Source: Orbicella franksi (taxonomy: Eukaryota). Taken from it: 64,000 nucleotides of DNA. Made by a program: the position numbers and the translations under genes. Positions 23,108-34,641 of this stretch are shown here, in pieces. Below the pieces are notes generated by a model, which was given only the letters and a program-made list of their open reading frames with translations, had not been told where the DNA came from and searched no databases. Positions within the stretch are counted from its first letter, which is position 1. Each line of letters starts with the position of its first letter. The DNA lies in the NCBI GenBank assembly GCA_964199315.1, contig OZ116709.1:1364001-1428000 (forward strand). Reading direction: 5' to 3'.

Positions 23108-24698
23108 CTATGAACGTGAACGTGAACGAGATTTAGAACGCCTTGGAGAGCCAGATCTTCTCCTCTTCGGTGATCTGGAAGGGGACTTGGATTTCTTTGG
23201 TGAATATGATCGACGAGGGCTGCGGGAGCGGGAATGGGACTTCCTTCTCGGGGATCTGCTTCGTGAACGTGACCGACTACGGCTTCGTGACCCACGGCCT
23301 CCACCAGGATTGTCCTGTTTTACACGAATGAAAGCAACTTCACCCTAAATGACAACAGGAAGAAGAGAAAAATGTAAGACAATTGTTTTTCAAGATAAAC
23401 TGAATAAAATGGGCTCCACAATAAACTATTTTCACCACTGAAAAGTTAGTGTTACCTCATGAGAACGGAACTTGGAGTCATCAAGATGTTTCAGGGCATA
23501 TTTCATGTCGTCATAACGAGAGTATTCCACAATACCAGTTCCATCCTTGAAAACGTCAGTAAACTGAACATCACCAGCATCTCGCATATGGTCCTTGAGA
23601 TCCTGCCAACTACCAGTGGGAGGCAACCCAGAGACTAAGACTCGGTACTCAGAGCGCCGTGGAGGAGGACCACGACCACCACCACCGCCACCACCACCAC
23701 CACCACCACCATAGCCACCACCGCCAAATCCTCCACCTGATCGGCCACCCCCACGTCCACCACGTGGAAACTCTACACGAATCCTCTGACCATCAAATTC
23801 GTATCCATCTCTCCCTCTGACTGCATCTTCAGCATCTCTATAAGGTAGTAAACAATTTATTCCTTTTTCAGTTAAAGTTGGTGCAGAAAACTTGAAAACA
23901 GGCTATTAAGACAAACCAAAACACAAAGAAATGAAAATACAAGGAGTGTCCTGCAGTGAAATTTAAGTTACAAGCCAAAGTGATGTTGACAGGTGACGAA
24001 TCCGATCTTGACTGTTTTATTCACTCATAAATTTTTCATGCCATTCACTGTCAACAGCTTTGAACCCGAATCTTGCCAAGAAAGAAACGCCAGGAACTTT
24101 CTTCAAAAGAAACTTAACTCTTCCCACCGCAATGCAAAACCGTGGAAACAATACAGTTCTTCGGGCACAAACTTATAACTGCTGAATCCATGGATCTGAC
24201 TGTTTCGTCACAGTTGCGTAAAAAATTAAAATAGCGAATGCTGAGAAAAGAACAAATCCATGATGACGAATTAGTTTTCTTGAAAAGAAGCTTTTCTCAC
24301 AAGCCAGCACTTTGCCCAACAGCTAAAATGTATCAGGAAGAAATGGATCAGCGTCAGAAAACGAAACCCGATCGAGCAAGATAGAAACGACGCCGCTCGA
24401 AGAAGACCGAGGAAAAATCGCCCAACAAGCACATAACACTAAGAGAGTGTATAACTAAACAAGTCTAGTTATAAAATACGGGTTGAACTTCAGTTTAAGT
24501 ATTCCTTTCTTACCTTGGGTCATTAAATTCGACGAAAGCAAACGGTGTGCCTCCAGTACCATAACGAGGAATTTTCAAGTCGACGTCGGCAATTTCTCCG
24601 TATTTGTAAAAGATATCTTCCAAATCTCTTTCGTCTACGTTAGAAGGCAAGTTTCCAACGTAAACTCGCCTACTATTGTTATTGCTTCGATTCATCAT
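23108..24698 (-). CDS. SRSF1: Serine/arginine-rich splicing factor 1 (ASF/SF2; co-orthologue of vertebrate SRSF1/SRSF9)
   Basis: Exons 24698-24514, 23837-23456, 23344-23108. RRM1 (RVYVGNLP...PFAFVEF...[26 protein letters not shown]), Gly-rich linker, pseudo-RRM2 with [10 protein letters not shown], and a C-terminal RS domain. Confidence 0.95.
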
Positions 24699-24990
24699 TG
24701 GGCTAAAATAAGAGTCGTTAAACGTCCTTAAAAAAGGAAGTCTAACAAACTGCGTCAGTACAAAGATTCAAAGATGGCCGGCCACGAGTAAGGTCTGCTA
24801 AAGGGGAGTCCTATCTTTGATCAGGGACTCCTACCCAGGTCTCCATCCAAAGTTGACTGGCGCGTGGAGTTATGGGTTGATATAGGCGGACCAAAAATCC
24901 AGAACATTTCACGAATCAAATCGTAAACTTTGAGAACAGTATCCAATCAGAGACAAGCAGGAAAGGAAAAATAGGGAAAGGAAAAAATAG
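24699..24990. promoter_or_regulatory. Short divergent promoter between SRSF1 and DYNLL copy 1
   Basis: About 300 bp between head-to-head genes. CCAAT box at 24943, AAGATGGC (YY1-like) at about 24771, and a 15-mer TGGGTTGATATAGGC (24873-24887) shared with the upstream region of DYNLL copy 2. Confidence 0.55.
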
Positions 24991-33200: not shown

Positions 33201-34641
33201 TAAAAATATTGTAAATTGAATACAGTCAGTCCTCTTTTTACATGTAATTTGCTAAGCAGACAAGCAAGTAACAAACATGAACTAAGGGAGATTATTTTGA
33301 ACCAACCTAAAATCTCAGAATTAACCTGAAGAGCATTACACAGCATTAGTTAACCTAGTGCATGATTGAATTACTGCTTCAGGGGGTGGTACAATACAGT
33401 TTGCTTTTAATAAAGGGTTAACACAAAATCAGTTTATCAACAAATTAATAATTATGAACAACATACCAGTTCCTCCAGCAACATCTAAAAGTTTTGTTCC
33501 CTCAGGAGGGTTAAGAACCCTGATAAGTCTGTCTTTCCACAATCTGTGTATTCCTAAGCTCATGGCATCATTCATTTTGTCATATGAACTTGCTACATTT
33601 TCAAACACCTTGTAAACTGAAAAATGAATTACAATATCTTGCTAGAGTGATAACATGGTAGATACCATACCCTACCCCCACCTCTTCACAATCTTATAAA
33701 TTACTCTTCTGCTATGTACTAATACTTTCTTTCCCCTTACCTAGAAGTGACAACTACATGTAATGAGTCTGTGCGTTTCCTCAATATAACCCTGACCAGT
33801 GGTTAAGCCAGGGAACCAGGAGAAAGCTGGTAATAATCATGCATGCACAAAATGCAAAATCCAATGTTAGTATTTAACCAGTAAAACATTTAATTCTAAC
33901 AATTACTGGGGAACTCTATTCTACCATCCTCTCAGGACAAGTTATGAAATTTAATGTTTTTGTCGTTGTGCCAGAAAATATCTAAATTCCCCCATACACA
34001 CCCCAACAATAGGATTTTTGGCTTAAAGGCCCTTCCCACCCCTCTGGAAGTTTTAGTCTAACCTCATAATTTCCTTTGAAAATTTTGGCCCTTGAGAACT
34101 CCCATCTCGTCTGAAGTTCTAAATCTGACCTTCCAGTGGAGGTGTGGATATTTTCTGAAACTCCTGGATTTCATAAATTCCAAGAAGTTGGGGTTCAAAA
34201 GACCAAAGGTGTCAAAGGGAAATAATGGCTAATTTTGGCCTAAACTGGAATATTTTCCAGAAGGGTTGTAATGGGGTAGGGGTATGGATATTTCTGGAAT
34301 AATGCAATATATAATTTAAACTTTCCAACTGATTTTGCTTATTATAGTTGCCAACTAAATGGTGGTGGTTCATAAGCCATTTGTAAGACTTTGGTCTGAC
34401 CGTCATAGCTGACCTTATAATGTGCAGTTAACTACCAACAAGATAAAGCACATGCGTGCCTACCTTTCTGGGTCTTCTCTTGTTCTGACACTCTCTTGTA
34501 TCCGAAATGCGTACTTTTCTCTTCTGTTTCATAGTTGGAGAACAGCCGATATCTCATCTTGGACAACCAAGACCCACCACAATACGAACAACGAGCAATA
34601 ACCAGGGCAAAGGTCCTGGAACTCATACAAGGAGCCGCCAT
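30223..34641 (-). CDS. COQ5: Ubiquinone biosynthesis C-methyltransferase COQ5, mitochondrial; 1-nt frameshift in exon 5 as sequenced
   Basis: Exons 34641-34464, 33616-33467, 33131-32973, 32214-32108, 32020-31933, 31377-31266, 30324-30223. Motifs [85 protein letters not shown]. Confidence 0.93.
30790..31165 (-). mobile_element. GC-rich repeat fragment, possibly the 5' end of a non-LTR retroelement, in a COQ5 intron
   Basis: Abrupt GC-rich island in an AT-rich intron. Shares AGGCACCTTCCC with a similar GC-rich island at about 59240-59560. Family not identified. Confidence 0.35.

What the first reader, a model, noticed from the sequence alone, without database searches (positions are those of the whole stretch)
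23108..34641. SRSF1/9 <- DYNLL -> COQ5 <-: gene order and orientation shared with human
Seen: SRSF (-), DYNLL x2 (+), COQ5 (-) are contiguous, with SRSF and DYNLL sharing a roughly 300-bp divergent promoter. Known: human 12q24.31 has SRSF9 (-), DYNLL1 (+), COQ5 (-) in this order, the paralogous 17q22 locus has SRSF1 divergent from DYNLL2, and PPP1CC is also on 12q24. Inference: a three-gene microsyntenic block older than the cnidarian-bilaterian split, possibly held together by shared regulation although the genes have unrelated functions.
Basis: partly seen in the sequence, partly recalled or inferred. Interest (0 to 1): 0.75.

Follow-up and report, generated by a model that had tools for sequence, protein, structure and literature searches.

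The report
Coral-to-human SRSF–DYNLL–COQ5 gene block
Three unrelated housekeeping genes (a splicing factor, the LC8 dynein light chain and a coenzyme-Q methyltransferase) lie in the same order and orientation in this coral, in amphioxus and in humans, so this is a real gene neighbourhood dating back at least to the cnidarian-bilaterian ancestor, one more example of a phenomenon that is already known.

Summary
The window carries an SRSF1/9-type gene (-, 24698-23108), two tandem DYNLL/LC8 genes (+, CDS 26536-26805 and 28795-29064) and COQ5 (-, 34641-30223). Nothing recognisable lies between them. An independent assembly that is 98% identical and colinear, plus several related coral contigs, rules out a mis-join.

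The same order and orientation occur in two amphioxus assemblies and in an unidentified metazoan contig of 6.5 kb. Human and pig gene lists give the same order.

Parts of the block survive elsewhere:
- DYNLL-> <-COQ5 in four sea stars, a scallop and, by inference, a clam.
- SRSF<- ->DYNLL in ten Lepidoptera, where one inversion of that pair put COQ5 on its other side.
- SRSF next to COQ5 without DYNLL in a scorpion and a brachiopod.
- All links lost in the annelid Owenia.

So the block is inherited from at least the cnidarian-bilaterian ancestor.

Why it persists is inferred, not shown. The likely reasons are a shared divergent promoter of under 393 bp for SRSF and DYNLL-a, and convergent transcripts that bridge the DYNLL-COQ5 spacer, which has RNA-contig evidence in a related coral.

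No paper I could search names the trio; the large published lists could not be read. I rate it a new member of a known kind, of moderate interest.

The parts
22050..23107 (-). Likely SRSF 3' UTR, unusually conserved among corals
   Evidence: 88-96% identity to four coral relatives per 250-bp bin, equal to or above the coding exons. Introns are about 80% and spacers 30-80%. Not shown to be transcribed.
23108..24698 (-). SRSF1/9-type splicing factor gene, 3 coding exons (24698-24514, 23837-23456, 23344-23108), 267 aa: RRM, glycine-rich linker, pseudo-RRM with SWQDLKD, RS tail
   Evidence: model; RRM_1 twice; human SRSF1 E 3.8e-49.
24699..25091 (.). Inferred shared divergent promoter region: SRSF 5' UTR, conserved motifs (GGGTTGATATAGGC at 24874-24887, CCAAT box at 24943-24949) and the inferred non-coding exon 1 of DYNLL-a, ending at donor AAG|GTGGGT (25091|25092)
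   Evidence: Alignment of six corals and motif scans. Start sites not mapped.
25355..26188 (.). 834-bp MITE-like insertion with 45-nt terminal inverted repeats, inside the inferred DYNLL-a 5' UTR intron
   Evidence: Absent from the more distant coral relatives (gap), present in the 98% identical L035.
26536..26805 (+). DYNLL-a (LC8) coding exon, 89 aa, with a polypyrimidine tract and AG acceptor directly before the ATG
28473..28667 (+). DYNLL-b promoter motif (the same 14-mer, at 28473-28486), CCAAT box (about 28510-28519) and non-coding exon 1, ending at 28667; intron 28668-28794
   Evidence: The splice is proven at RNA level in a related coral: contig L046 equals genomic L037 minus a 126-nt intron.
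28795..29064 (+). DYNLL-b (LC8) coding exon, 89 aa
29065..30222 (.). 1.16-kb tail-to-tail spacer between DYNLL-b and COQ5, holding both 3' UTRs
   Evidence: In a related coral the RNA-derived contig L046 covers the whole equivalent spacer and enters the last COQ5 exon in antisense.
30223..34641 (-). COQ5 (2-methoxy-6-polyprenyl-1,4-benzoquinol methylase) gene, 7 exons: 34641-34464, 33616-33467, 33131-32973, 32214-32108, 32021-31933, 31377-31266, 30324-30223; 298 aa

Best explanation
This is an ancestral gene neighbourhood, SRSF1/9 (-), DYNLL (+), COQ5 (-), inherited from at least the last common ancestor of cnidarians and bilaterians. It is retained intact in scleractinian corals, amphioxus and vertebrates.

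Shown: the genes, their order and strands, and the same or derivable arrangements in other phyla.

Inferred: the block persists because it contains almost no DNA that can be cut without harm.
- SRSF and DYNLL are transcribed divergently from one short promoter region. Here that region is under 393 bp between the SRSF ATG and the end of DYNLL-a's non-coding exon 1. A break there would strip one gene of its promoter.
- DYNLL and COQ5 converge on a spacer of about 1 kb that is fully transcribed. A break there would cut a 3' UTR or terminator.

The gene products need not work together. The coupling is architectural, possibly with co-expression as a by-product. Corals, and separately the scallop, added a tandem DYNLL copy inside the block.
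For: Identical order and orientation:
- Corals L001, L002, L003, L035 and L037.
- Branchiostoma floridae and a second assembly.
- An unidentified metazoan, L103, with L106 from the same organism covering part of the trio.
- Human and pig gene order.

Derived states are each one step from that order:
- Lepidoptera have COQ5(+) SRSF(-) DYNLL(+), which is one inversion of the SRSF-DYNLL pair as a unit.
- The scorpion and Lingula have COQ5(+) SRSF(+), which is the ancestral order with DYNLL removed.
- Sea stars and the scallop keep DYNLL-> <-COQ5.
- A Mya arenaria gene model fuses COQ5 with the antisense strand of DYNLL.

The SRSF partner is SRSF1/9-type in every lineage checked.

Promoter: a conserved block with a CCAAT box and an invariant donor. 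The SRSF-DYNLL ATG-to-ATG distance is short wherever I measured it: 0.84-2.5 kb in most loci; one lepidopteran locus, L019, is about 5.3 kb.

Spacer: the RNA-derived contig L046 bridges DYNLL-b and COQ5 in a coral. L088 carries an intron-free COQ5 plus DYNLL on 2.6 kb.

From my own knowledge: both vertebrate ohnologue pairs, SRSF9-DYNLL1 and SRSF1-DYNLL2, remain neighbours.
Against:
- The block is breakable. SRSF is not next to DYNLL in sea stars. DYNLL is absent from the block in the scorpion and Lingula. Owenia COQ5 has neither neighbour.
- The coral promoter 14-mer is not found outside corals.
- In humans SRSF1 and DYNLL2 are tens of kb apart (my own knowledge), so a shared promoter cannot explain that pair.
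- L046 and L088 are assembled contigs. They show continuous RNA coverage, not which strand or which gene's UTR.
- Corals, amphioxus and vertebrates rearrange slowly, so neutral survival is a live alternative.
Confidence: 0.6

Rival explanations
1. The block is ancestral but has no selective constraint. It survived by chance in slowly rearranging lineages because two 1-kb spacers are small targets for breakpoints.
For: It is broken in different ways in Owenia, sea stars, the scorpion and Lingula. The three functions are unrelated. Hundreds of ancient neighbour pairs are known (PMC3514665), so a few three-gene runs are expected. Promoter motifs are not conserved between phyla.
Against: Both adjacencies are retained together in three distant lineages. 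The Lepidoptera inversion has its breakpoints outside the divergent pair. After rearrangement the genes stay neighbours rather than scattering. Blocks of three or more genes are reported as rare in cnidarians (PMC10719294).
Confidence: 0.33
2. The block is a genomic regulatory block. Long-range enhancers of one gene sit inside its neighbours, and that forces linkage.
For: The SRSF introns and 3' region are unusually conserved among corals.
Against: No developmental regulator is in the block. The whole unit is 11.5 kb here and 6.5 kb in L103. The conservation is best explained by the SR gene's own UTR and introns. Cnidarian regulatory elements are reported to lie close to their genes (PMC10719294).
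Confidence: 0.04
3. The resemblance is an artefact: assembly error, mistaken orthology, or independent assembly of the same neighbours in separate lineages.
For: DYNLL and SR proteins belong to multi-copy families. DYNLL has an intron-free coding exon, which could suggest retrocopies.
Against: Independent assemblies agree. The SRSF copies carry SRSF1/9 hallmarks in all lineages. COQ5 behaves as one gene per genome in the loci examined, apart from a local tandem duplicate in Lingula. Both coral DYNLL copies have a spliced 5' UTR intron, so they are not retrocopies. The chance expectation is about 6e-10 per lineage.
Confidence: 0.03

Closest known systems
Conserved ancestral microsyntenic pairs (CAMPs) of Irimia et al. 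2012, PMC3514665
   Same: Unrelated genes kept adjacent across metazoan phyla. One pair is head-to-head with a short spacer and conserved orientation, the class that paper links to shared promoters.
   Different: Here two overlapping pairs form a strict three-gene run with all orientations kept from coral to amphioxus (and, with strands from memory, human). Neither the main text nor any other searchable paper names these genes. The supplementary list is not held, so prior listing cannot be excluded.
HSPE1-HSPD1 bidirectional pair
   Same: A head-to-head housekeeping pair with a very short shared promoter, conserved from humans to unicellular relatives.
   Different: HSPE1 and HSPD1 work together as co-chaperonins. 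SRSF1/9 and DYNLL have no known common function, and a shared promoter is only inferred here.
Microsyntenic blocks of three or more genes in cnidarian comparisons (Zimmermann et al. 2023, PMC10719294)
   Same: The same kind of object and the same taxa (anthozoans, amphioxus, scallop).
   Different: That study reports such blocks as rare in cnidarians, and none of four or more genes across the anthozoan-medusozoan split. Its held supplements do not mention these genes by name.
ASCIZ (ATMIN)-DYNLL1 feedback loop (PMC5963919)
   Same: It shows that the DYNLL1 promoter is a tightly controlled, conserved regulatory target.
   Different: No ASCIZ site is known for corals. The 14-mer shared by both coral DYNLL promoters is only a candidate element and is restricted to corals.

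Membership tests
Ancient conserved microsyntenic block (CAMP-type) | The adjacent genes are not paralogues of each other | tested here: met
   RRM, Dynein_light and Ubie_methyltran are unrelated Pfam families.
Ancient conserved microsyntenic block (CAMP-type) | Adjacency of orthologues in several distant phyla | tested here: met
   Cnidaria, Cephalochordata and Vertebrata have the full trio. Echinodermata, Mollusca, Arthropoda and Brachiopoda have part of it.
Ancient conserved microsyntenic block (CAMP-type) | Conserved relative orientation | tested here: met
   Same strands in corals, amphioxus and L103. Human strands come from my own knowledge only.
Ancient conserved microsyntenic block (CAMP-type) | Presence in non-bilaterians other than anthozoans, or in unicellular relatives | not testable with these tools
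Bidirectional-promoter gene pair | Head-to-head genes with start sites less than 1 kb apart | tested here: inconclusive
   Head-to-head is shown. Start sites are unmapped. The inferred exon 1 donor at 25091 limits the gap to under 393 bp.
Bidirectional-promoter gene pair | Correlated expression | not testable with these tools
Genomic regulatory block | A developmental regulator flanked by bystander genes that carry its conserved non-coding elements | tested here: not met
   All three genes are housekeeping types and the block is 6.5-11.5 kb.
SRSF1/SRSF9 subfamily of SR proteins | RRM, pseudo-RRM with the SWQDLKD motif, and a C-terminal RS domain | tested here: met
   The 267-aa model has all three. 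The best structure match is SRSF1.
LC8/DYNLL | Full-length Dynein_light domain, about 89 aa, near-identical to DYNLL1/2 | tested here: met
   93% identity to vertebrate DYNLL proteins, mostly DYNLL2-named.
COQ5/UbiE methyltransferase | Ubie_methyltran domain across the protein, with closest relatives being eukaryotic COQ5 | tested here: met
   Every exon tested (exons 2-7) matches consecutive parts of PF01209. 67% identity to sea-star COQ5.

The most novel reading that the evidence does not exclude
The trio is a single co-regulated transcription unit in all but name. One divergent promoter drives SRSF1/9 and LC8, and convergent, overlapping DYNLL and COQ5 transcripts tune each other. On this reading the dosage of a splicing regulator, a dimerisation hub and a CoQ-synthesis enzyme has been coupled since before Bilateria. 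A bilaterian proto-block may also have included a HEATR6-like gene next to COQ5.
Probability: 0.2. Interest if true: 0.55.

Novelty: new member of a known kind. Interest (0 to 1): 0.4.

Why it matters
Strict runs of three genes with orientation preserved between cnidarians and vertebrates are few. This one is compact and made of essential, broadly expressed genes. It shows natural 'experiments': an inversion that spares the head-to-head pair, and loss of the middle gene. That makes it a clean case for asking whether deep microsynteny reflects shared promoters and overlapping transcripts or simply small breakpoint targets. It also gives a marker for the ancestral linkage group behind human 12q24 and 17q22, and it flags an annotation error in a clam genome. 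It does not change any current view of genome evolution.

Tried and rejected
There is no RNA evidence for this genome.
- My first homologue search with a COQ5 representative turned out to be a frog and returned only vertebrates.
- The Mya COQ5-like model had no gene position on record.
- The coral 14-mer GGGTTGATATAGGC was sought upstream of DYNLL in amphioxus, Lepidoptera, sea stars, scallop, L060, L088, L103 and L106. No match was better than shuffled sequence.
- A COQ5 tree could not place the unidentified contigs L088 and L103 within animals.
- No spliced RNA contig was found for DYNLL-a.
- No HEATR6-like or DEF8-like gene is in the window.
- The PP1 N-terminal exon does not tell alpha, gamma and beta apart.
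- The ankyrin gene could not be named.
- Supplements of Irimia 2012 and Simakov 2013 are not held. Those of Zimmermann 2023 and Robert 2022 (one file cut) do not name the genes.
- Nine metagenome contigs of 5 kb or more carry DYNLL without SRSF or COQ5. L033 is coral-like; the taxa of the other eight are unknown, and LC8 is about as conserved in algae, so they say nothing.
- A sigma-70 promoter scan is irrelevant to a eukaryote.
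Full report
**What is in the window**

On the minus strand there is a three-exon gene (24698-24514, 23837-23456, 23344-23108) encoding 267 aa. The protein has an RRM, a glycine-rich linker, a pseudo-RRM with the SWQDLKD motif and an RS tail. Pfam finds RRM_1 twice. The best solved structure is human SRSF1 at E 3.8e-49, far ahead of SRSF6 at 6e-18.

Two LC8-type dynein light chain genes follow on the plus strand. Each has its 89 codons in one exon (26536-26805 and 28795-29064). Both match Dynein_light at 1.2e-43 and human DYNLL1/2 at about 1e-55.

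COQ5 follows on the minus strand with seven GT-AG exons from 34641 to 30223, giving 298 aa. Exons 2-7, the ones tested, match successive parts of Ubie_methyltran.

The ORFs in the spacers have no Pfam hit, and no Rfam family or tRNA is present.

**Not an assembly artefact**

Contig L035 from a JGI metagenome is colinear with 20953-30935 at 98%. Contigs L001, L002, L003 and L037, at 75-89% nucleotide identity, carry RRM (-), DYNLL (+), DYNLL (+), COQ5 (-) in the same layout. These coral-holobiont contigs fit that.

**Promoter and transcript structure**

The SRSF and DYNLL-a ATGs are 1,838 bp apart. Of that, 834 bp is a MITE-like element with 45-nt inverted ends (25355-26188). It is missing in the more distant relatives, where the ATG-to-ATG distance is 0.98-1.34 kb, apart from L005 at 2.15 kb.

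Both DYNLL copies have a polypyrimidine tract and an AG immediately before the ATG. For DYNLL-b, the upstream non-coding exon ends at 28667.

Its splice is proven at RNA level in a related coral. Contig L046 is 100% identical to genomic contig L037 except that it lacks exactly the 126-nt intron.

For DYNLL-a, the equivalent donor (AAG|GTGGGT, 25091|25092) is invariant in six corals. No spliced contig was found for this copy.

Both copies have the same 14-mer, GGGTTGATATAGGC, followed by a CCAAT box about 200 nt upstream of the donor (24874 and 28473). The motif is specific to corals.

If the DYNLL-a exon 1 is real, the SRSF 5' UTR, the promoter and that exon all fit into 24699-25091.

**Other species**

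Exact-protein look-ups returned annotated genomic contexts. I re-checked each with tblastn.

| Lineage | Arrangement |
|---|---|
| Branchiostoma floridae and a second assembly with the identical DYNLL protein | SRSF (-), DYNLL (+), COQ5 (-), exactly as here |
| Unidentified metazoan contig L103 (6.5 kb) | Same trio, order and strands |
| Unidentified contig L060 | SRSF (-), DYNLL (+) |
| Four sea stars (Asterias, Patiria, Acanthaster and one more) | DYNLL (+), COQ5 (-); no SRSF within 10 kb |
| Pecten maximus | Two tandem DYNLL (+), then COQ5 (-) |
| Mya arenaria | A 'COQ5-like' gene model runs from COQ5 exons into the antisense frame of DYNLL, which implies the same tail-to-tail pair |
| Ten ditrysian Lepidoptera | SRSF (-) head-to-head with DYNLL (+). 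In the two loci that reach far enough, COQ5 (+) lies beyond SRSF |
| Centruroides and Lingula | COQ5 (+) directly followed by SRSF (+), no DYNLL |
| Owenia | COQ5 has neither neighbour |

The Lepidoptera layout is what a single inversion of the SRSF-DYNLL pair as a unit would produce. The scorpion and Lingula layout, viewed from the other strand, is the ancestral order with the middle gene gone.

In every lineage the linked RRM gene has SRSF1/9 hallmarks.

Published tables list SRSF9, DYNLL1, COQ5 consecutively in human and pig. SRSF1 and DYNLL2 share a deletion of under 1 Mb at 17q22. The human strands, the close SRSF9-DYNLL1 start sites and the SRSF1-DYNLL2 adjacency are from my own knowledge.

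**Interpretation**

Chance or convergence cannot give this pattern. The expectation is about 6e-10 per lineage for two named adjacencies in named configurations among about 20,000 genes. All observed states are at most one rearrangement from SRSF (-), DYNLL (+), COQ5 (-). The block is therefore inherited from at least the cnidarian-bilaterian ancestor. I put that at about 0.9.

Why it lasted is less certain. The evidence for constraint:
- The head-to-head pair has short spacers in nearly every locus measured (0.84-2.5 kb ATG to ATG; one lepidopteran locus about 5.3 kb).
- It has a conserved promoter block in corals.
- It moved as a unit in Lepidoptera.
- It is kept in both vertebrate ohnologue copies.
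- In the DYNLL-COQ5 spacer, the spliced RNA contig L046 continues colinearly for 1.5 kb past the DYNLL-b stop into the last COQ5 exon.
- L088, from an unidentified animal, carries DYNLL and an intron-free COQ5 on 2.6 kb. Together these suggest convergent transcripts that meet or overlap.

The evidence against:
- Several lineages broke the block.
- No cis motif is shared between phyla.
- The lineages that keep it are slow rearrangers.

I give architectural constraint about 0.6 and neutral survival about 0.33.

**Comparison with what is known**

This is the class described by Irimia et al. 2012: about 600 ancient pairs, enriched for head-to-head orientation and short spacers. Zimmermann et al. 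2023 report blocks of three or more genes as rare in cnidarians. It is not a genomic regulatory block, because it contains no developmental regulator and is very small.

No searchable paper names the trio. The large supplementary lists could not be read. I therefore rate it a new member of a known kind, possibly already buried in a list.

**Limits**

Nematostella, Hydra, sponges, placozoans and unicellular relatives remain untested.

Noticed in passing
window 22050-23107: About 1 kb downstream of the SRSF stop codon is 88-96% identical across four coral relatives. That is as conserved as the coding exons and well above introns (about 80%) and spacers. It recalls the ultraconserved 3' UTRs and poison exons used by vertebrate SR genes for autoregulation (my own knowledge).
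   Followed up: partly
window 24874-24887 and 28473-28486: The same 14-mer, GGGTTGATATAGGC, followed by a CCAAT box, sits upstream of both DYNLL copies and nowhere else in 64 kb. It is exact in seven related coral loci but absent upstream of DYNLL in other phyla. It is a candidate coral DYNLL promoter element.
   Followed up: yes
window 25355-26188: An 834-bp MITE-like element with 45-nt terminal inverted repeats and poly-C/poly-G inner ends, inserted in the inferred DYNLL-a 5' UTR intron. It is present in the 98% identical contig L035 but not in more distant corals.
   Followed up: partly
L026-L031 (sea stars, Pecten, Owenia): A HEAT-repeat gene with DUF4042 (HEATR6-like) lies head-to-head with COQ5 in four sea stars, a scallop and an annelid, so this is a second conserved pair. 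Human HEATR6 is at 17q23 near SRSF1-DYNLL2 (my own knowledge), which hints at a four-gene bilaterian proto-block. No such gene is in this window.
   Followed up: partly
P0214 (Mya arenaria WAR01661.1): This deposited 'COQ5-like protein' is a chimeric gene model. Residues of about 59-231 are COQ5 and residues 226-308 are the antisense reading frame of the neighbouring DYNLL gene.
   Followed up: partly
L032 2120-2389 and 10001-10270: Pecten maximus also has two tandem DYNLL genes upstream of COQ5, as corals do. Whether the duplications are independent cannot be told from 89 residues.
   Followed up: no
L014 2106-3190: In one lepidopteran assembly the last part of the SRSF pseudo-RRM exon appears nine times at 124-bp spacing. 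This is either a tandem repeat or an assembly artefact.
   Followed up: no
L023: Lingula has a partial tandem duplicate of COQ5 and two SRSF1-like genes 6 kb apart on opposite strands.
   Followed up: no
window 34641-35117: COQ5 is itself head-to-head (476 bp ATG to ATG) with an ankyrin-repeat gene (+) that starts at 35117 and has ankyrin exons out to about 39700. This partner is not conserved: amphioxus has a C1/RH-domain gene there, and sea stars, scallop and Owenia have a HEATR6-like gene.
   Followed up: partly
window 51399-54087 (-): A PP1 catalytic subunit gene (STPPase_N and Metallophos). Its N-terminal exon scores alike against human PP1 alpha, gamma and beta, so calling it PPP1CC is not justified.
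   Followed up: partly
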